64,000 bases of DNA from positions 124,001 through 188,000 of the IMG/VR virus record IMGVR_UViG_3300023179_005186. The stretch is one strand, 5' to 3'. The translations under genes were made by a program, and so were the position numbers. Each line of letters begins with the position of its first letter. Position 1 is the first letter of the stretch. This document shows positions 9,299 through 50,774 of this stretch, piece after piece. A model generated the notes under the pieces. That model made no database searches and was not told the DNA's origin. It saw nothing but the letters and a program-made list of their open reading frames with translations.

Positions 9299-12200
9299 AT
9301 GCAGACTATTGAGCCAAAAGATTCAGAACTAACAAATAATAAAATTTTCGAGCTTTTGGATGCAAGATTTGGCCGCAGATATATTTTATATGAACATCTT
9401 CATAATTCTTACAACGAATTAATTAATCAGATTATTTATTATTTACAAACAAATGATAATATTTTTCAAGAAAACAGAATTGGAGATTTAATATACAGAT
9501 ATCGGTTCAAATATGAAAATCTATTTGTTCGTCCTCCCTTAAATGATAACGGAGATTCACTTATGTATCCTATGGATGCACGTGATAGGAATTTAACTTA
9601 TTCAATTAAAATTTTAGCAAAGATTACGCAACTACAAGAAATTTATGATTTAAATAAAAGTGAAATTATTAGTGTTAAAGTTATAGGAACTCCTGTCGAA
9701 AGAGAAACAGCTGTTATTTTACCTTGTATGGTCCGTTCCAAGTATTGTTCACTTGAAATAAATCGTGACTATAACAAGAAGGATTGTGAATATGATCCTG
9801 GAGGATATTTTATAGTTGGTGGTTCTGAAAAAATAGTTTTATCAATAGAAAGGATGGTAGAAAATAAACCACTTGTGTTTATAAAAAAAGATGCTGGTTT
9901 TATTAATTATTCAGTTAAAGTTAATTCAAGATCTTCAAATCCAAATATTATGATGCAACCAATTGAAATTAGAATAGAAAAAAATTATGATATTAAAATT
10001 AAGGTTCCAATTTTACAGGAAGTATCAGTATTTGTATTAATGAGAGCATTAGGTTTAGAAACTGATAAAGAAATTATCAAATATATTTTATACAATGATA
10101 ATGACATTGATATGTTAAATTTACTTAAAATATCTATAGATCTATCCAAGACTGAAAATAAGAAACTTATATTAACAAAAGAAGATGCTTATTTTAGTTT
10201 AACTAATAAATTACGAGTTGTTAAAAAATTTACTGATAAAGATAAAAAGCTCTTATATGATGAAAAAAAAGAGCATTTGCAACAATTATTAAGTACAGCA
10301 TTTATGCCACATATGAATAATAATCATCATGCTGATATTTTTAAAGCAAAAGCTTATTTTTTAGGTTTAATGGTAAATCGTTTATTAAATGCTTATTTAG
10401 GAAGAACTGAACCTGATGATCGTGATTCATTTGTTAATAAGCGAATCGATATGCCAGGTGAATTAATTTTTGATCTATTTAAGCAATATTATAAAAAAAT
10501 GTTAAATGATTGTAACAAGTTTTTTAATAGAAGATCTGCTTCAAATCATGATAATCCTCTAAATATTATTAATCAAATTAAGCCAACAACTATTGAACAA
10601 AATATTAAATCTGCAATGATGACGGGAAATTGGGGGAAAAAAAAAGGTGTTGCGCAAATGTATCCAAGACTAACTTTTTTACAATCATTATCTTTTCTAC
10701 GTAGAGTTGATCAATCAAGTTCAGAGGCATCTGCTAGTAAATTAACTGGTCCTAGACATTATCATCCATCTCAAGTTGGTTTTTTATGTCTAACAGGTGA
10801 TACAGAAGTGTTGATGTCAGATGGTTCGATAAAGTTAATAAAAGATATTAAAAATGGTGAATCAGTTATTTCGGTTGATAATAAAACTATGACAGAGGTA
10901 TCAACTCCAATTAAAAATTGGTTTAAACAAGATTGTGAAAAATTATTAAAGATAACAACTATTTCTGGTAGAGTTATTAAATGTACTCCAGATCATAAAT
11001 TATTAACTAAAGTTGGTGATAAATATGATTATGTAGAAGTTCAAAATTTAAAACCAAATCAAGATAGTTTAATTACTCGTCATACAGTAAAATATATTCC
11101 TCTAGATAAAACAACTGAAGTTATTATTACTGATGTATTAGAATTATACAAGATTCCATTACTTGAATTAGGATATTTAGACAAGTCTATATCACAAGAA
11201 AAATTAGAAATATTAGCAAGATTAATTGGTTTAAATATTGCAAATGGTCATATAGAAATCAAACCTGATGAAAAATACTATAATTGTGAATTTTTAGTAG
11301 CTGAAGAAAAAGATGCATTAGACTTATTAGATGATATTATGAAATTAGGTTTTGGAACTTCATCAATTAAAAGTGTAAAAAATAATCATATTAAATATAA
11401 AAATGGTAAACATACTATTTATAACACATGGAGTATTATTAAAAATGGTGTATTTGCTTATTTACTAAATTATTTGGGAGCTTTTGATAGAAAAAATCAA
11501 TTAGAATGTAAAATTCCTGATTGGATTATGAATGCAAATAAAAGAATTCAAAGAGAGTTTATAAGTGGTTTTATTGCTGGTAATGGATCTAGATTATTTA
11601 TGAATTTAAATAAAGGTATTTTTAAAATTAATTGTAGTAGATTGTGTCAAGTTTCTTCAAAAGTAAATGTAGTTGACACAATTAAATATTTAGAACAATT
11701 TATTATAATATTTAAACAGTTTAATATTGATTGTTATGTTAGTAAATTAAAAGAAACAGATGATTATGATAAAACACGTTGTGAAATTATCTTTAAACAA
11801 TCTTATGAAAATTTAAATAATTATGCTGATATAATAAACTTTAGATATTGTAATGAAAAAAGAAAAAAATCAGCTTTAACAATTGAATATATAAAATACA
11901 AAAATTATTATAGTGCAAATATTCCTAAAGATAAAAAACTTGGTACTAATCCATGTTTAAGTTATAAAGATTTTATTAAAGAAACGAATATCAATGATGA
12001 AAACTTTTTAATTAAAATAAAGTCGATTGAAGAAATCCCTACAGAACCAGTTTATGATTTTGAGACAATATATGATACACATAGTTTTGTAGCTGGTTCA
12101 CTTTACACTAGTAATTGCCCGGTAGAGTCTCCAGAGCATTCTAACATTGGTTTAGTAAAACATTTAAGTTTAGTTGGATCAATTACAGTAGGATCTCAAG

Positions 12201-15200
12201 ATCAGTCAATATTAATATATAATATGTTAAATGAAAATAAAAACTTTATACATTTAGATAATCATTCTGCGACATACTTGGCTACAATAACAAAAGTATT
12301 TTTAAATGGTGAATGGATTGGTATGACAGATAATCCAGATGATTTATATCAAGAATTACGAACTTTAAAACAGAATGGTATTATTTTAAGAACAAATGGT
12401 ATAACTCTCGATTATACAAGAGGTGAAATAAGAATTTATACAGAGTCTGGGCGTTTATACAGACCGGTATTTACTGTTAAAAATAATAAATTATTAATGA
12501 CGGATAAGATAATTGATGATATTTGCAAGGATTCAAAATTAAAAGGATTAAATAAATTTGATGCATTAATTACTAAATATCCAGAAACAATTGATTATTT
12601 AGATATGGAAGAACAGTTTTATGCATTAGTTGCAGATTATAAAGATAAAGTTTTAGAAATGAAATCTAGAGAATTAAATGTATTTGATGATACAAACGAA
12701 CCTATTATTAATCGTTATGATAAATCAATGATTATGAAATATACTCATTGTGAATTTCATCCAACTGTTATCCTTGGTATTATTGCTGGAAATATTCCTT
12801 TTGCAAATCATAATCAAGGACCAAGAAATATTTTTCAGTATGCACAAGGTAGACAAGCGATGGGTATTTATTCAAGTAATTATCGTGATAGATTGGATAT
12901 TTCATATATTCTTTATCATACACAAAAACCGTTAGTAAATACTAAGATAGCAAAATATGTCCACACAGATATTTTACCTTGTGGTGAAAATGCTGTAGTA
13001 ATGATCGGATGTTATACAGGATATAATCAGGATGATTCTATTATATTTAATCAAACATCTATAGATCGTGGATTATTTAGATCTACATCACTTAAAAAGT
13101 GGAGTTCAAAGATTGAGAAAAATCAATCTACATCACAAGATGATATATTTATGAAACCAGATATTTCAAAACTTACAGGAACAAGACATGCTGTTTATGA
13201 TAAATTAAATGACAAGGGATATGTTCCTGAAGAAACTGTTGTTGAAAATGGAGATGTAATTATTGGAAAAGTAACTCCAATACAACCAGCTCCAGGATCT
13301 AACAAATGTTTTAAAGATTCTTCTGAAATCTATAAATCTCAAGAAACTGCTATAATCGATAAAGTTTTTACGGGAATACATGATTCTGAAGGTTATGAAA
13401 TGATTAAAATTAGAACAAGATCCGAAAGAATTCCAAAGACAGGAGATAAATTTTGTTGTTTTAGCCCAGATCATGACATTTTAACAGAACGTGGTTGGAT
13501 TGGAATAAGTGAAGTAACAAATATGGATAAAGTTGCTTGTTTAAATTATGGAATATTAGAATATAATAATCCAATTCAAGTAATGAATTATGATTATGAA
13601 GGTAAAATGTACTTATTAGATGCATATCAAGTAAATTTAAAAGTAACTCCAAATCACAGAATGTATGTTAAAAAAATAAATTCTGAAAATTATAATATAG
13701 AATTAGCAGAAAATATATTTAATCAGACAAGAATATATAAAAAAAATGCAAATAATTATTTAAATAATGATAAACATCAATTATTAAGTTACTATAATGA
13801 GACTTTAAAAATTAATGTTCACTATCCAACTGGATTTATTCTTAAAAATAATGAAGATATTAATGATATTAAAATATTAGATATTAATGCATGGTTATCA
13901 TTTTTTGGAATATGGATGGCGGAAGGATTTGCTGCTAAAACAGCAAGATCTTTACAAGTAAGTTTTGCCGCTCATAAAAAACGAGTTAAAGATGAGTTAA
14001 CACGTGTTTGTAATATTCTTGGTTATGAAATTAATAAAAAAAAAGATAAATCGTACTCACTAGAAGAAGATATTTGGATAATATCTGATAAAAAGTTGAG
14101 GAAGTATATGGAACCCTTGAGTGTTGGTGCTGTGAATAAATCATTACCAGATTGGGTATGGTATTTAACAAAAGAACAATGTAATTTATTAATTGATGGT
14201 ATGATGTTAGGTGATGGTTATAAAATTAAAGGAACAACTACACGAAGATATGATACATCATCATTAAAATTAGCAAATGATTTTCAAAAACTATGTTTAC
14301 ATGCTGGAATTTGTTGTAATTTAAAACTTAAATATAAAGCTGGTAATGAAACTATTATTAAAACTCCTGGTAGAGAAGGAGAAAAAATAAAATCAACAAG
14401 AGATGCGTATAGATTAACTATTATTTCAAAATCAGAACAAACAGTAAATATTAATAAATTTAATGATTCTTATATTGATTATAAAGGTAAAGTTTATTGT
14501 TGTAGTGTTCCAGGTGAAGGAATAATTTATGTTAGAAGAAACGGGATTCCAATTTGGTGTGGAAACTCGAGACATGGGCGAGTAACTTTTACCCATAACA
14601 GGAGGCTGTGGAATCGTGAGGTTCCAATTCAAGTATTGAATTAACAATACACAGTGTTACCTTCTAGTCGGCAATATCGTCGGGCTAATATTGAATTTTT
14701 CAATATCAAGTGATGATATTGTGGTACGTCAGAGACATCTGATACCTAGGATAGTATAATCATACTATTTGAACAGGCAAGAATTGTGAAAACGGTCAAA
14801 ATCTCAAGAAAACCTTTGAGACAAGACCGTCGGTGTAGTAAAGTCGCGAGGCTTTATGATATCGCGATCGACTGGGTCACAGTTCGGTGAAGTTATAAAT
14901 TAACTTTGCTTAATGTACAGTCAGCCCCCGTGGTGATACGGTGCTACAATGATCAGGATATATTGAAAAGATATTCTAGGGAAGTTGTAGGTTAAACAAG
15001 ATATATATTTACTTGTTTAATGATTAGCGAAAAAGGTACTATCGGTCTAACTTTACATCAATCAGACATGCCCTTTACTAAAGAGGGTATTAGTCCAGAT
15101 TTAATTATTAATCCAAATGCGATCCCGAGTGAAATTCGCTCATGTGGTCTAGCAATAGATTGCAAGTCTCTTATTTATAAAATAAGAGGCAACACTTTCA

Positions 15201-16845
15201 AATTGCGGGAAAGTCGTCAATAAGTATACAAATAAAATTGTCTTAAAAATAAAAATATATTATTAAATAATAAAATGTTAAGAGTGTGCAAAATATGTAA
15301 TATTGAAAAAGATATTAATGAGTTTAGATGCAAACTTGTTAAAACTTAAAAGTAAATGATCCTGAAAAATATAAAGAAATAAAAACTAAACAATCTAATA
15401 GAGACAAAAACTACTATGATAATAATAAAGATAGAGTTAATCAAAGAAATGTTTTAACTGGACAAATATTTCACCATTATTAGCATCTGAAAACAGAAAA
15501 AAAATAATAAAATATATGATACACATATTTTAAGACAAGAATTAAGAGTATACTTATTTAAACAGATTATGGATACCGCATCTATATCTAGCGATATAGA
15601 GTAGCAGGTGGTATAATGGCCATCGGATGGTAAAAACTCCATGATACACGGTGACAATCCGCAACCAAGATTTCCAATAATGGGAATAAGGCTCAGAGAC
15701 TAGACGGAAGTGGGCTTGTTTTATTTTAATAAGACAGGCTTAAGGTATAGTCCACCCCCTAATGAAAGTTAGGGGATTAAGTGAGAATGACGATCGCACA
15801 ATTAATTGAATGTTTAATTGGAAAAGTTGCTGCAATTAAAGGTTTAGAAACAGACGGCACATCTTTTAACCAAATAGATATAGAAACAATAAAAAATGAA
15901 TTAGAAAAATTAGGTTATGAAAAAAATTGTAATGAATACTGTTATAATGGTATGACAGGTCAAAGACTTAAAATACCAATGTTTATTGGTCCTACTTATT
16001 ATCAAAGATTAAAACATCTAACCGCTGATAAAATACATTGTTTAACAGGTGATCATGATGTTTTAACAGAAAATGGATGGATAAATATTCAAAATATAAC
16101 TAAAGAAATAAAAGTTTTAACTTTAAAGTCAGATATAGAATTATATGATTATCCAAATCATGTTTATAAATATGAAGATTTAAATGAAAAAATTCTGTAT
16201 CATGTTAAAAATGAAGATATTGATACAATTATGACTGAAGAACATAGAGTTTATATTAATAATAATTTATTAATTAAAATAAATCAACTTGATCATAAAA
16301 ATAATACAATATATAAATGGTATAATAGAAGTAGTTCATTTAATGTTAATCATACTACTGATATCACTATTTATCAATCTAAAGATAATGTTTATTGTTT
16401 AAGTGTTCCAAGTGAAATATTTTATGTTAGAAGAAATGGTAAAGAGTTTTGGACTGGTAATTCTAGAGCTCGAGGACCAAATACAATGCTTACACATCAA
16501 CCACCAGAAGGTAGATCAAAAGATGGTGGATTACGTTGCGGTGAAATGGAGCGTGATTCAATTATAGCACATGGAATGAGTAAATTCTTAAAAGAAAGAT
16601 TTTTAGATGTTTCTGATGCTTACTCATGTTATGTATGTGATATTTGTGGTTTATTCGCACAGCGTGATAAAAAGAAAGATAACAAAACAGTACCACAAAA
16701 TACAGATATTTACAAATGCATTAATTGTAAGAATAAAACAAAAATTTCAAAGGTAATTATTCCTTATGCATTTAAATTACTAATTCAAGAATTAATGTCA
16801 ATGAACATTGCACCAAGAATTAGAACTAAACAATATAGTTTATAA
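9299..16845 (+). CDS. RPB2: RNA polymerase second-largest subunit; exons 9299-14579, 15030-15130 and 15784-16845; three inteins
   Basis: Motifs [56 protein letters not shown] and [11 protein letters not shown]. Joined exons give 6444 nt (2147 aa); removing 954 aa of inteins leaves 1193 aa, a normal RPB2 size. Confidence 0.95.
10787..12115 (+). mobile_element. Intein 1 in RPB2 (443 aa) with a degenerate LAGLIDADG endonuclease
   Basis: GFL|CLTGDTEV...CTPDH...VYDFET...YTSN|CPVESPE. Both LAGLIDADG-like helices have Asn at the acidic position (NIANG, IAGNG). Confidence 0.93.
13457..14566 (+). mobile_element. Intein 2 in RPB2 (370 aa) with a LAGLIDADG endonuclease
   Basis: GDKFC|CFSPDHD...VTPNH...FFGIWMAEG...[10 protein letters not shown]...WCGN|SRHG. 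Confidence 0.93.
14580..15029 (+). mobile_element. Group I intron 1 in RPB2 (450 nt, ORF-less)
   Basis: Removal restores H-G-Q-K-G-T (ggg c|aa aaa ggt) and the intron ends in G. P1 atgggc/acccat; P7-like gactg...cagtc in atcgactggg / taatgtacagtcag; acggtc/gaccgt stem. Confidence 0.88.
15131..15783 (+). mobile_element. Group I intron 2 in RPB2 (653 nt)
   Basis: Removal restores IPS|RMT. The exon ends in U paired with G15138 (gagt/gctc) and the intron ends in G. Classic P (aaattgcgggaa), Q (aatccgcaacc), R (tcagagacta) and S (aaggtatagtc) elements. Confidence 0.93.
15275..15503 (+). pseudogene. Decayed intron-encoded HNH/Zn-finger homing endonuclease
   Basis: [17 protein letters not shown]...stop (15275-15349) and, in another frame, [18 protein letters not shown] (15450-15503); the central part is missing. 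Confidence 0.7.
16039..16461 (+). mobile_element. Mini-intein 3 in RPB2 (141 aa, no endonuclease)
   Basis: DKIH|[14 protein letters not shown]...MTEEH...VYCLSVP...[11 protein letters not shown]|SRARGP. Confidence 0.93.
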
Positions 16846-31316: not shown

Positions 31317-31381
31317 TATTATTATAATAAATAAATATTATATATTAAAATCAATTTTTATATAAAAAACGTTAATAAATT

Positions 31382-32080
31382 TTATTTTTCGATAAATGTA
31401 TTCCAAAATGAATCACATACTGAACAAATATATCTGGTAGAATAAGATCCTTTTTTTCTATAAAATATGGCATTTTTTAATTTTGGTTCTTTATGTGTTG
31501 AACACTTATCGTTAATACAAGTATATTTTTTTGTATTTGGTAAAGTAGGATCATTTTTATAATTTATAAAATTAAAATTATAAAGATCATCTTTTTTTTC
31601 ATCACCTCTTGAAAATATGAACATTTTATCAGGAATAATTTCATAATAACCACATGTCTTACAATAAAAATAACATTCTTTATTTACAACACTATCAGTT
31701 GATTTTGATATTTGACCAATTTCTTTATTTAATTTTTGATTAATTTTATTAATTAAAATAGTTTTTTCTATATTTGATAATTTATTAAAATTTGGATTTT
31801 TTGTTAATTCTTCAAAATTTATTTTTTTAATTTTTTTTTCTTTATCTTCATCATCTGATTCTTCTGAATAATCTATTTTACCACCTAAAATACTTTCAAT
31901 TAATTCATTATTTATATTCATATTTGTATTAATAGTATCAGTATCTGTTTCTTCTGTTGAATTAAAACCAGATGAATTTGAAAAACCATTAGTATCATCA
32001 TATTCATTTTCTTGTCTTTTTTCAAAAGAAATAATATTGTTTGTTATATCCATAAAATTTTGACATATCTTGCAAAACAT
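31382..32080 (-). CDS. RPB9: RNA polymerase subunit 9
   Basis: MFCKICQN...YCKTCGY...DPTLP...CINDKC...YICSVC. Confidence 0.85.
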   Translation of the reverse strand: MFCKICQNFMDITNNIISFEKRQENEYDDTNGFSNSSGFNSTEETDTDTINTNMNINNELIESILGGKIDYSEESDDEDKEKKIKKINFEELTKNPNFNKLSNIEKTILINKINQKLNKEIGQISKSTDSVVNKECYFYCKTCGYYEIIPDKMFIFSRGDEKKDDLYNFNFINYKNDPTLPNTKKYTCINDKCSTHKEPKLKNAIFYRKKGSYSTRYICSVCDSFWNTFIEK

Positions 32081-32262
32081 TTGACTTATATATATTTATA
32101 TATATTATATTATTCTAAATTCATTTTTTTATTAAATATTAAATTTTTTTATCATCTTAAATGCAGTAAAATTATTTTATTACTTTCTAATCTCTTCTTA
32201 ACCTAATTTTTATATTAAAAATTGATTTTAATATAAAATAATTATATAGTATATAGATTAAT

Positions 32263-49899: not shown

Positions 49900-50282
49900 T
49901 TTGTTCAAAAACTTTCTTTTTACTTTAACTCTAAAGATTCTGAATTTATTGTTAATACACAAAATATTAGTACAAAGCTAAATAATTTAATTCAACAAGT
50001 TATTATTAGAACTCCTATTTATAATAAATGTGGAAAAAAATTGAATATAAAGCTAATAAGTTTCTTCTACAGAAATGCTTGTTAGAATTTATAATACATA
50101 CTTTATTGAAGGAAAAGGAACAATTAATTGGAAATACTCATTTATCAACGATAAACCTAATTTTTTATATCCTGTAGGTGTAATGGCTGAATCAAATATA
50201 GTGTTAGGCACTGGTATTTTTTTAATTTGAAAGGTAGTTACATTATATCCTACTCATGATTTATTAAAAAATGTAAAAATAT
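49900..50282 (+). pseudogene. Degraded ORF abutting element B
   Basis: Frameshifted coding-like segments TPIYNKCGKK and YNTYFIEGKGTINWKYSF...VLGTGIF; limits are approximate. Confidence 0.45.
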
Positions 50283-50284
50283 TA

Positions 50285-50548
50285 CACCCATTTACAAAAA
50301 AATGGGACAGTTTTATTTATGTTTTTTTAAAAATTCATTTGCTCTTAAAAAAGAAAGACCTTTAAAATATAAAAGGAATTATGATTTAGAAAAAGGAGAG
50401 ATAATAAAAGAAATAAAACAAAAGGTGATAACCCCTAACAAAAATGACACTACAAATCAGGGGGTCAAGTATCAACCAAGCCTATAATAGGTGCAATTAT
50501 GCCTTTAATTTACAAATTAAGAGTGTCCCACTTTTTTGTAAATGGGTG
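50285..50548. mobile_element. Element B: 264-bp MITE-like element with TA duplication
   Basis: TA|CACCCATTTACAAAAAAATGGGACA ... TGTCCCACTTTTTTGTAAATGGGTG|TA; TIRs match at 24 of 25 positions. Confidence 0.88.
50424..50523 (+). ncRNA. Candidate structured RNA (omega-RNA-like) abutting the right TIR of element B
   Basis: Stems ggtgata/tatcaacc, acccct/gggggt, gccta/taggt and ttaatt/aattaa. Confidence 0.4.
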
Positions 50549-50614
50549 TAATAAATAATATAAAATTAATATTTTTTAACAAAAAAATTTTTATATAACC
50601 CTTATATATATAAA

Positions 50615-50707
50615 ATGTCAGAATTAGCTAAAAATATATTAATTGGTATCGCTATCTTTTTTGCTATTATTTTTTTATTATATATTATATTAGTGGCAGA
50701 TAAATAA
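50615..50707 (+). CDS. 30-aa single-TM micropeptide (below the ORF-track cutoff)
   Basis: MSELAKNILIGIAIFFAIIFLLYIILVADK*. Confidence 0.5.
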   Translation: MSELAKNILIGIAIFFAIIFLLYIILVADK

Positions 50708-50774
50708 AAAATTTTTTTTAAAATAAAAAATTTTAATAATTTATTTAAATTTTTAATATATATTTTAAATTATA

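What the first reader, a model, noticed from the sequence alone, without database searches (positions are those of the whole stretch)
50285..50570. Element B may be a mini-element reduced to a Fanzor/TnpB tail plus its omega-RNA
Seen: the 264-bp interior encodes ERPLKYKR (50353-50376), followed by ~100 nt of GC-richer nested stems (50424-50523) that run straight into the right TIR. Established: TnpB/Fanzor guide-RNA scaffolds overlap the nuclease 3' end and stop at the element end, and the guide is read from flanking DNA; some Fanzors ride in Tc1/mariner-type elements. Inference: RPxx(Y/F)xR recalls the extreme C-terminus of viral Fanzor proteins. This would be a nuclease-less guide-RNA cassette, gaining a new guide (here taataaataatataaaatt...) at each insertion and usable in trans.
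Basis: inference. Interest (0 to 1): 0.8.

Follow-up and report, generated by a model that had tools for sequence, protein, structure and literature searches.

The report
Nuclease-less Fanzor guide-RNA mini-transposon in giant virus
A 264-bp mini-transposon in a giant-virus genome is the cut-down remnant of a 4.1-kb mobile element, present elsewhere in the same genome, that carries an RNA-guided nuclease (Fanzor); the remnant has lost the nuclease but keeps its complete guide-RNA scaffold, a kind of 'ghost' locus already known from fungi and algae but, in the literature searched here, not from a virus.

Summary
Window 50285-50548 is a TA-flanked element with 25-nt terminal inverted repeats (TIRs). 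Longer copies with the same TIRs carry a DDE (IS630/Tc1-mariner) transposase, a C2H2 zinc-finger protein and a 720-730-aa Fanzor1 homologue (E 1e-19 to 1e-26 against solved Fanzor1 structures). One complete 4,085-bp master copy lies about 105 kb away on the same 315.7-kb viral contig. The mini-element is an internal deletion across a TAAAAA microhomology. It keeps the left TIR with the last 12 transposase codons (antisense), the last 46 Fanzor codons (KKERPLKYKR...) and the right TIR. The last ~125 nt (50424-50548) fold into four helices that are conserved across about 40 distinct copies, with many compensatory changes (91-97% of cells paired, against 33-50% when partners are slid). Their position is that of a Fanzor guide RNA (ωRNA). 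All 25 consensus pairs are intact in the window copy. Three things are not shown: transcription, loading by the master's Fanzor, and cleavage. Any central deletion of this element would keep the scaffold, so its retention does not prove selection. Fanzor-less 'ghost' ωRNA loci and Mariner elements carrying Fanzor1 in giant viruses are both published, so this is a new member of a known kind.

The parts
50283..50284 (.). Left copy of the presumed TA target-site duplication. The flank reads ATTA, as at all 16 distinct ends in the viral contigs.
50285..50309 (+). Left terminal inverted repeat (TIR), CACCCATTTACAAAAAAATGGGACA
   Evidence: identical to the left TIR of the master copy L016:2152-2176
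50313..50351 (-). Remnant of the DDE transposase gene: its last 12 codons (FLRANEFLKKHK) plus the stop codon. Window 50280-50351 is 100% identical to the master copy (L016:2147-2218).
   Evidence: Pfam DDE_3 7e-19 and HTH_Tnp_IS630 for the full protein
50346..50351 (.). Deletion junction: TAAAAA microhomology shared by the left-arm and right-arm alignments to the master copy
   Evidence: query positions 77-82 fall in both alignments
50347..50487 (+). Remnant of the Fanzor1 gene: its last 46 codons (KKERPLKYKRNYDLEKGE...GVKYQPSL) plus the stop codon, homologous to residues ~684-729 of the master's 729-aa Fanzor. The catalytic domains are absent.
50424..50548 (+). Predicted ωRNA scaffold. P1 is 50424-30 with 50470-77. 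P2 is 50431-36 with 50460-65. The invariant GUCAAGU motif is at 50464-70 (its CAAG, 50466-69, unpaired). P3 is 50480-84 with 50488-92, with the stop codon in its loop. The near-invariant single-stranded GCAATTA box is at 50493-99. P4 is 50509-16 with 50535-42, inside the TIR.
   Evidence: covariance-model hit 50417-50548, 142.5 bits, the only credible hit in the window
50524..50548 (-). Right TIR, with one mismatch to the left TIR. The CCCAC variant is shared with the L001/L069 lineage.
50549..50569 (+). Right TA and flanking DNA that would be read as the guide (TAATAAATAATATAAAATTAA). The length is assumed by analogy with published 14-21-nt guides.
   Evidence: inference from position; published guide lengths in PMC10432273 and PMC10530073
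50036..50230 (+). Context: an AAAAATTGA early-promoter motif (50036-44) and a 51-codon ORF (50075-50230) on the same strand, ending 55 nt before the element. This is a possible read-through source of the transcript.
   Evidence: metatranscriptome contig 49981-50351

Best explanation
Element B is a non-autonomous, internally deleted copy (a 'ghost') of a giant-virus Tc1/mariner-IS630-type transposon. The full form is TIR - DDE transposase(-) - C2H2 zinc-finger protein(-) - Fanzor1(+) - TIR.

Shown:
- Homology of both arms to full-length elements.
- A complete 4,085-bp master copy on the same viral contig, whose Fanzor keeps the RuvC Asp/Glu/Asp residues.
- A deletion junction lying in a 6-nt microhomology.
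- A ~125-nt structure at the Fanzor 3' end, specific to the right end and supported by covariation, that runs into the right TIR. It is fully intact in the window copy.

Inferred:
- The structure is the family's ωRNA scaffold.
- In the mini-element it is transcribed, most simply by read-through from the early-promoter gene just upstream on the same strand. It is then trimmed and bound in trans by the master's Fanzor.
- The 3' flank (from 50549) serves as the guide, directing cleavage of genomes that lack the insertion. The cleaved site would sit next to the ...ATTA left flank, acting as the target-adjacent motif (TAM), so that repair copies the element in (homing).
- The master's transposase can move the mini-element, since both TIRs are intact.

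My confidence by step: origin as a deletion derivative of a Fanzor transposon 0.97; the structure being the ωRNA 0.8; the mini-element's RNA actually being made and used in trans about 0.45.
For: TIR scan and ORFs of longer copies. Gene order from tblastn. Master copy on the same contig, with arm identities of 100% over 72 nt and 84% over 208 nt. Fanzor1 identity by phmmer against the PDB: PpFz1 3e-26, SpuFz1 2e-25 and GtFz1 9e-6 for the L010 protein, and 6e-19, 1e-17 and 2e-12 for the master's protein. Catalytic D/E/D conserved in all 14 family-1 proteins. Transposase hits Pfam DDE_3 and HTH_Tnp_IS630.

Structure. RNAalifold on a plain MAFFT alignment of 17 copies predicts 25 pairs, 10 of them with compensatory changes. 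96.9% of cells are paired against 33-50% when partners are slid, and 0 of 500 shuffles reach this. A second subfamily of 11 copies independently gives P1-P3 with 6 compensatory pairs. Across 43 copies aligned to the covariance model, 91.3% are paired against 33-46%, and 20 of 25 pairs change on both sides against 7-11. The window differs from its own genome's master by 3 fully compensated pairs and breaks none. The AACAAAAGG just 5' of P1 is conserved in two different reading frames, so the constraint is on nucleotides, not protein. The helix that uses the TIR (P4) has its partner only at the right end.

Published Fanzor ωRNAs lie at the ORF 3' end, span the right inverted repeat and read the flank. 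TA/TTA TAMs match insertion sites. Ghost ωRNAs work with SpuFz1 (PMC10432273, PMC10530073).
Against: There is no direct evidence of transcription, processing, binding or cleavage. The only RNA library that holds the element may contain DNA, and its contigs have no strand. No promoter lies inside the element; AAAAATTCA at 50330-38 is one mismatch from the viral early motif.

Only one mini-copy was found on the contig and in IMG/VR, so it is not an amplified MITE family. Both genes end at the element's termini, so any central deletion keeps the scaffold, and retention says nothing about selection. No empty site was recovered, so the TA duplication and the ATTA 'TAM' are inferred.

The right arm is only 84-87% identical to the master while the left arm is 100% identical, so cross-recognition by the resident Fanzor is assumed. 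The family's Fanzor has lost most cysteines of the C4 zinc ribbon, and its activity is untested.
Confidence: 0.6

Rival explanations
1. Inert debris. The element is only a dead deletion product of abortive gap repair after excision. Its RNA scaffold is intact because it lies within 125 nt of the terminus and the copy is young. It is neither expressed nor used.
For: It is a single copy. The geometry argument holds, and several other deletion derivatives of varied size exist, including a decayed one (L063b). The microhomology junction is typical of miniaturisation of Tc1/mariner elements (PMC3814204 listed). There is no internal promoter.
Against: All 25 consensus pairs and every conserved single-stranded motif are intact. 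A catalytically intact-looking Fanzor and a transposase with matching TIRs sit in the same genome. A same-strand promoter-bearing gene lies 55 nt upstream, and a metatranscriptome contig joins that gene to the element. Ghost ωRNAs of SpuFz1 are functional.
Confidence: 0.3
2. The conserved 3' structure is not a guide-RNA scaffold. It is a cis element for something else: 3'-end formation of the Fanzor mRNA (the hairpin-type termination known in mimiviruses), or a subterminal DNA structure bound by the transposase.
For: P4 is a long terminal hairpin that includes the TIR. Giant viruses of this group end transcripts at hairpins (my own knowledge, not tested here).
Against: There are three further helices with compensatory changes, an invariant GUCAAGU motif and an invariant GCAATTA box inside the coding tail, which is far more than a terminator needs. 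The structure exists only at the Fanzor end, whereas transposase sites should be symmetric. Position and layout match published Fanzor and TnpB ωRNAs.
Confidence: 0.08
3. Chance inverted repeat and chance peptide match in AT-rich DNA.
For: The genome is about 20% G+C and full of weak inverted repeats. The single-sequence fold has z of only -1.8.
Against: 0 TIR matches are expected in shuffles. There are dozens of homologous copies in other contigs with the same ends. The arms are 100% and 84% identical to a full element.
Confidence: 0.01

Closest known systems
Ghost Spu-1 elements of Spizellomyces punctatus (Saito et al. 2023, PMC10432273), and the ~20 stand-alone fRNA copies in Chlamydomonas (Jiang et al. 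2023, PMC10530073)
   Same: Bounded by inverted repeats, lacks the Fanzor ORF, and keeps the ωRNA-like region at the right end. Full Fanzor copies are present elsewhere in the same genome. Published ghost ωRNAs support SpuFz1 editing in trans.
   Different: Here the host is a giant-virus genome, not a eukaryote. There is one copy, not 134. The origin is traceable base by base to a transposase-plus-Fanzor master, whereas no transposase was found for Spu-1. The scaffold is ~125 nt and overlaps the coding tail, whereas the SpuFz1 scaffold is 75 nt and downstream of the stop codon.
PGv-1, a Mariner element with transposase, GIY-YIG nuclease and Fanzor1 in Phaeocystis globosa virus 12T (Bao & Jurka 2013, PMC3627910)
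   Same: A Tc1/mariner-type element with TIRs and TA duplication, resident in a giant virus and carrying a DDE transposase plus Fanzor1 plus a third gene.
   Different: The third gene here is a C2H2 zinc-finger protein, not GIY-YIG. Sequence relatedness to PGv-1 was not tested. PGv-1 was described as a single full-length copy; no mini-derivative or RNA was described.
Stowaway-like MITEs born by microhomology-mediated miniaturisation of Tc1/mariner elements (PMC3814204), and submariner MITEs of Pandoravirus salinus (PMC4495683)
   Same: A small TA-flanked TIR element derived from a Tc1/mariner parent by internal deletion at a short microhomology. The Pandoravirus case shows such elements in giant viruses.
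   Different: Those MITEs are multicopy and carry no known RNA-guided-nuclease component. This one is single-copy and carries a complete ωRNA-like scaffold.
TnpB ωRNA of IS200/IS605 (for example ISDra2)
   Same: The guide-RNA scaffold overlaps the nuclease 3' end, stops at the transposon's right end, and takes its guide from the flank. The TAM equals the insertion-site motif.
   Different: The transposition chemistry differs (a DDE cut-and-paste element with TIRs, against the HUH single-strand mechanism), and there is no sequence similarity of the RNA (no Rfam hit).

Membership tests
Tc1/mariner-IS630 superfamily transposon (the family as a whole) | DDE/D transposase with an N-terminal helix-turn-helix domain | tested here: met
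   The master's 302-aa protein hits Pfam DDE_3 (7e-19), HTH_28, HTH_23 and HTH_Tnp_IS630. Only its last 12 codons remain in the window.
Tc1/mariner-IS630 superfamily transposon (the family as a whole) | Terminal inverted repeats and TA target-site duplication | tested here: inconclusive
   The TIRs are clear. TA is present at all 16 distinct ends in the viral contigs and in the 42 right ends, but always as ATTA/TAAT. No empty site was found. A split host gene in L010 is in frame under both readings.
MITE (miniature inverted-repeat transposable element) | Small size, TIRs, no transposase, derived from an autonomous element | tested here: met
   264 bp; both arms homologous to the 4,085-bp master.
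MITE (miniature inverted-repeat transposable element) | Amplified to many copies | tested here: not met
   One copy with this junction was found on the contig, in IMG/VR and in the metagenome scan. The two right-flank variants seen in reads look like strain variants of one locus.
Fanzor1 (the protein of the full-length element) | Sequence homology to experimentally characterised Fanzor1 | tested here: met
   phmmer against the PDB: PpFz1 3e-26, SpuFz1 2e-25 and GtFz1 9e-6 for the L010 protein; 6e-19, 1e-17 and 2e-12 for the master's protein.
Fanzor1 (the protein of the full-length element) | RuvC catalytic Asp...Glu...Asp (D-x-[TS][TS]...RD motif) | tested here: met
   D(P/I)G, DEFRTSK and NRDENAVNNM are conserved in all 14 family-1 proteins and align to SpuFz1 IDPN and LDEYKTS and to PpFz1 NRD. 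None of this is present in the window remnant.
Fanzor1 (the protein of the full-length element) | C4 zinc ribbon between RuvC-II and RuvC-III | tested here: not met
   Family-1 proteins keep only two of the cysteines. The second viral family in the same loci keeps more. No Pfam hit for family 1; the family-2 protein of L010 scores Cas12f1-like_TNB at 24.9 bits, below the 26.3 cut-off.
Fanzor/TnpB ωRNA | Conserved structured RNA at the nuclease 3' end that reaches the transposon's right end | tested here: met
   Four helices with covariation across about 40 copies, ending at the TIR tip.
Fanzor/TnpB ωRNA | Transcribed, with a 3' extension into flanking DNA, and bound by the nuclease | tested here: inconclusive
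   Metatranscriptome contigs cover 49981-50559, but they carry no strand information and DNA carry-over is possible. Binding is not testable with these tools.
Fanzor/TnpB ωRNA | TAM next to the target that matches the insertion-site motif | not testable with these tools
   The invariant ATTA on the left flank is compatible with the published TA/TTA/TTTA TAMs of Fanzors. A cleavage assay is needed.
Ghost ωRNA locus (sensu Saito et al. 2023) | Bounded by inverted repeats, no Fanzor ORF, ωRNA region retained, Fanzor encoded elsewhere in the genome | tested here: met

The most novel reading that the evidence does not exclude
The transposase-Fanzor master and its ghost form an RNA-guided homing or gene-drive system that acts between co-infecting giant-virus genomes. 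Each insertion, ghosts included, adds a guide against the uninserted allele of rival strains. The element would then spread, or rivals would be cut, during mixed infections. That would be the first natural role shown for a Fanzor, in a compact system where transposase, nuclease, guide and target are all identified.
Probability: 0.2. Interest if true: 0.8.

Novelty: new member of a known kind. Interest (0 to 1): 0.5.

Why it matters
The natural function of Fanzors is still open: both 2023 papers say the role in transposition is unknown. This 316-kb viral genome holds a full set of parts with traceable relationships. It has a DDE transposase and a Fanzor1 inside one pair of TIRs, a covariation-defined ωRNA, and a nuclease-less derivative whose origin can be read base by base.

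The case shows how ghost ωRNA loci can arise: microhomology deletion of an element whose two genes both end at the termini. It also offers a small, synthesisable test system (729-aa protein, ~150-nt RNA, candidate ATTA TAM) for trans-loading and homing. The compact, very AT-rich scaffold and a Fanzor1 without a zinc ribbon may also interest people who engineer these nucleases.

Tried and rejected
- Pfam on the Fanzor proteins and on the 61-aa ORF gave nothing for family 1. The PDB sequence search was needed to identify them.
- RNAalifold on a MAFFT alignment of all 37 ends gave no structure, because helix registers differ between subfamilies. This was solved by folding the subfamilies separately and then aligning to a covariance model.
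- Rfam found nothing at the element even at E<=1, and nothing at gathering score over the whole window.
- Searching for a syntenic relative without the insertion, using the neighbouring AAA-ATPase, found only the same contig. Reads from four runs showed no empty-site joint.
- A second TIR type (CAGTGAAAAAGGTG) was searched for in the window and is absent.
- The longest other inverted repeat in the window that might have been 'Element A' (31323-31369 with 32207-32253) is a pair of divergent early promoters, not a transposon.
- An internal promoter was considered and not claimed: AAAAATTCA at 50330-38 is one mismatch from the motif.
- Selection for retaining the scaffold was considered and rejected as not inferable, for two reasons: the geometry of the element, and the fact that my 3'-end search pattern selects for copies that keep the scaffold.

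Full report
**Context.** The window is about 20% G+C and densely coding on both strands. It encodes giant-virus core genes: RNA polymerase subunit 2 split by inteins and an intron, a D5-type primase-helicase, topoisomerase IA and an NAD-dependent ligase. The Mimiviridae-type early promoter AAAAATTGA is about 9-fold enriched 39-54 nt upstream of its genes. The window equals positions 124,001-188,000 of the 315,722-bp contig IMGVR_UViG_3300023179_005186 (also Ga0214923_10000006), which comes from lake-water metagenomes.

**The observation.** Window 50285-50548 is bounded by 25-nt inverted repeats with one mismatch, where shuffles expect none. It has TA on each side. ERPLKYKR is encoded at 50353-50376 as stated, but inside a 61-codon ORF (50302-50487) that continues 37 codons beyond it. 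The region 50424-50548 is 36% G+C and folds into nested stems. On its own it is only modestly better than shuffles (z = -1.8).

**Relatives.**
- An exact-match scan for the TIR in viral contigs returned 12 loci. Longer elements with the same ends carry a 720-730-aa ORF ending ...GCINRDENAVNNMIKIVNH..K(K/Y)KERPLKYRRDYDL... This is the same tail as the window ORF.
- That protein matches the solved Fanzor1 structures: Parasitella 3e-26, Spizellomyces 2e-25, Guillardia 9e-6. The KERPLKYRRD motif aligns to the last residues of Parasitella Fanzor1.
- tblastn across loci gives the full gene order: TIR - DDE transposase(-) - C2H2 zinc-finger protein(-) - Fanzor(+) - TIR.
- The transposase hits Pfam DDE_3 and HTH_Tnp_IS630.
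- A complete 4,085-bp copy (L016:2152-6236, contig ~279,917-284,001) lies about 105 kb from the mini-element on the same contig. Its 729-aa Fanzor matches SpuFz1 at 6e-19.
- The RuvC Asp/Glu/Asp residues are conserved in all 14 family members examined. Most cysteines of the C4 zinc ribbon have been lost in this family.

**Anatomy of the mini-element.**
- Window 50280-50351 is 100% identical to the master's left end: the TIR plus the last 12 transposase codons, read on the minus strand.
- Window 50346-50553 is 84% identical (174 of 208) to the master's right end: the last 46 Fanzor codons, the 3' untranslated stretch and the TIR.
- The two alignments overlap in TAAAAA, so the deletion junction lies in a microhomology. 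This is the known route from Tc1/mariner elements to MITEs (PMC3814204, listed).
- The right arm is closer to copies from other metagenomes (L069 93%; L001 and L049 92%) than to the resident master (87% over the scaffold). The element is therefore either a recombinant or derived from a master no longer on this contig. This mosaic is unexplained.

**The RNA.**
- A pattern built from conserved 3'-end blocks retrieved 43 unique sequence windows (42 usable 3' ends, one spurious hit) from viral and metagenome contigs.
- Folded one by one, they share one architecture. There is a two-part helix (P1/P2) interrupted by a GUCAAGU motif that is invariant in the alignment, capped by a large variable loop. 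Then comes a short hairpin (P3) whose loop holds the Fanzor stop codon, then the single-stranded GCAATTA box, then a terminal helix (P4) whose 3' strand is the inner half of the right TIR.
- On a plain MAFFT alignment of 17 copies, RNAalifold predicts 25 pairs, 10 of them with compensatory changes. 96.9% of cells pair, against 33-50% with slid partners. Ten pairs have double changes, against 0-1 for slid partners, and no shuffle of 500 reaches this.
- A second subfamily of 11 copies, with quite different helix sequences (GUUCCA/UGGAAC in place of GUGAUA/UAUCAAC), independently gives P1-P3 with six compensatory pairs.
- A covariance model built from the first set aligns 43 copies. 91.3% are paired, against 33-46% for slid partners. 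20 of 25 pairs change on both sides, against 7-11. The covariation score is 0.40, against 0.09 or less. That alignment is fitted to the model, so it leans toward the structure.
- The protein tail over this region is not conserved between subfamilies, and AACAAAAGG just 5' of P1 is conserved in two different reading frames. The constraint is therefore on RNA or DNA, not on protein.
- The TIR-pairing partner of P4 exists only at the Fanzor end, which argues against a symmetric transposase site.
- The window copy has all 25 pairs intact. It differs from the master by three fully compensated pairs. It is the only credible model hit in the 64-kb window (142.5 bits). No Rfam family matches.

**Comparison with the literature.**
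- Fanzor ωRNAs are transcribed from the ORF 3' end across the right inverted repeat, with a 14-21-nt guide taken from the flank. SpuFz1 uses a 75-nt scaffold and a CATA TAM, and other Fanzors use TA, TTA or TTTA (PMC10432273, PMC10530073).
- Here every one of 16 distinct ends in the viral contigs has ATTA outside CACCC, and all 42 right flanks begin TAAT. That fits a TA duplication within an ATTAAT target and a TA/TTA-type TAM. Without an empty site I cannot exclude that the AT belongs to the element.
- Fanzor-less 'ghost' loci that keep the ωRNA were described in S. punctatus (134 loci) and other eukaryotes, and ghost ωRNAs supported editing by SpuFz1. Chlamydomonas has about 20 stand-alone fRNA copies.
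- Mariner elements carrying a transposase plus Fanzor1 in a giant virus (PGv-1) were described in 2013.
- My two literature searches found no description of a ghost locus in a virus. That is an absence in a limited library, not proof.

**Expression.** A freshwater metatranscriptome run (X2) holds two contigs with 0-2 differences: 49981-50351, and 50322-50559 continuing into a different right flank. The same flank variant occurs in the DNA runs X1 and X3, so it is a strain variant of the locus rather than a second insertion. The contigs have no strand and the library may contain DNA. This is compatible with read-through from the early-promoter gene at 50036-50230 but does not show it.

**Limits.**
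- Other deletion derivatives have the same layout, with a transposase C-terminal remnant abutting a Fanzor C-terminal remnant and the scaffold: L077 at 804 bp, L063 at 1,527 bp, L003, and a decayed copy in L063. L071 (415 bp) keeps only the scaffold, beside unrelated DNA.
- Both genes end at the termini, so any central deletion keeps the scaffold. My search pattern also required the scaffold. Retention therefore cannot be read as selection.
- The mini-element is single-copy.
- Trans-loading by a Fanzor whose own scaffold is 13% different is assumed.

**Verdict.** The reading 'Fanzor tail plus ωRNA in a nuclease-less mini-element' is supported by homology and covariation. Use in trans is plausible and has precedent, but is untested. 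This is a new member of a known kind and moderately interesting, mainly as a compact natural system for testing what Fanzors do.

Noticed in passing
window 9299-16845: The RNA polymerase subunit 2 gene is split. Pfam finds intein/Hint and LAGLIDADG segments inside the first 1,781-aa ORF. A G+C-richer non-coding gap (14645-15780) separates it from the C-terminal exon. Rfam scores a group I intron at 15533-15774 (58.1 bits, E 9e-14) in the focused search, although the whole-window gathering search missed it. The stretch 14645-15530 also looks structured and may be a second intron.
   Followed up: partly
L016:3505-3855 (-); L010:3479-3823 (-): The ~115-aa C2H2 zinc-finger protein that travels with Fanzor in most copies hits zf-C2H2_jaz, a double-stranded-RNA-binding zinc finger, among several C2H2 models (the L010 copy scores just below the curated cut-off). 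It is retained in copies that have lost the transposase (the 2.7-2.8-kb forms). It may be an accessory factor for the ωRNA or the nuclease.
   Followed up: no
L010:6547-10204; L019-L030: A second, diverged family sits next to the first in L010 and in many other giant-virus contigs. It has a Fanzor of ~650-690 aa (32-37% identity), a zinc-finger protein and a transposase 37% identical to the first family's. Its Fanzor ends right after GKRPE(V/K)(F/Y)CR and keeps more zinc-ribbon cysteines. The RNA model does not detect its 3' end.
   Followed up: partly
L001:483-5067: A 4.6-kb copy in which the Fanzor gene is split by an inserted HNH/NUMOD4 homing-endonuclease ORF (437 aa) and a second zinc-finger gene. 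This is a mobile element nested inside a mobile element.
   Followed up: no
window 50280-50351 compared with 50346-50553: The mini-element is a mosaic: its left arm is 100% identical to the resident master, its right arm only 84%. The right arm (including the CCCAC TIR variant) is nearest to copies from other metagenomes (L069, L001, L049). Whether this reflects recombination, gene conversion or template switching is unresolved.
   Followed up: partly
window 50560-50737: In runs X1-X3 a second variant of the locus replaces the sequence from 50560 onward with more than 600 nt of different DNA directly after the mini-element, and carries C>T at 50529. In X2, coverage of the window's sequence resumes near 50738. 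This is strain-level rearrangement immediately beside the element's guide-side flank.
   Followed up: no
L016:3089-3504: Between the transposase and the zinc-finger gene the master carries an AAAAAATTGA early-promoter motif, followed 58 nt later by a small coiled-coil-like ORF interrupted at an A-run. This may be a fourth passenger gene driven by a virus-type promoter.
   Followed up: no
window 31323-31369 and 32207-32253: The 47-nt, 83% inverted repeat flanking ORF 31382-32080 consists of two copies of the early promoter context (TATATAAAAATTGATTTTAATAT) driving divergent genes. It is not a transposon.
   Followed up: partly
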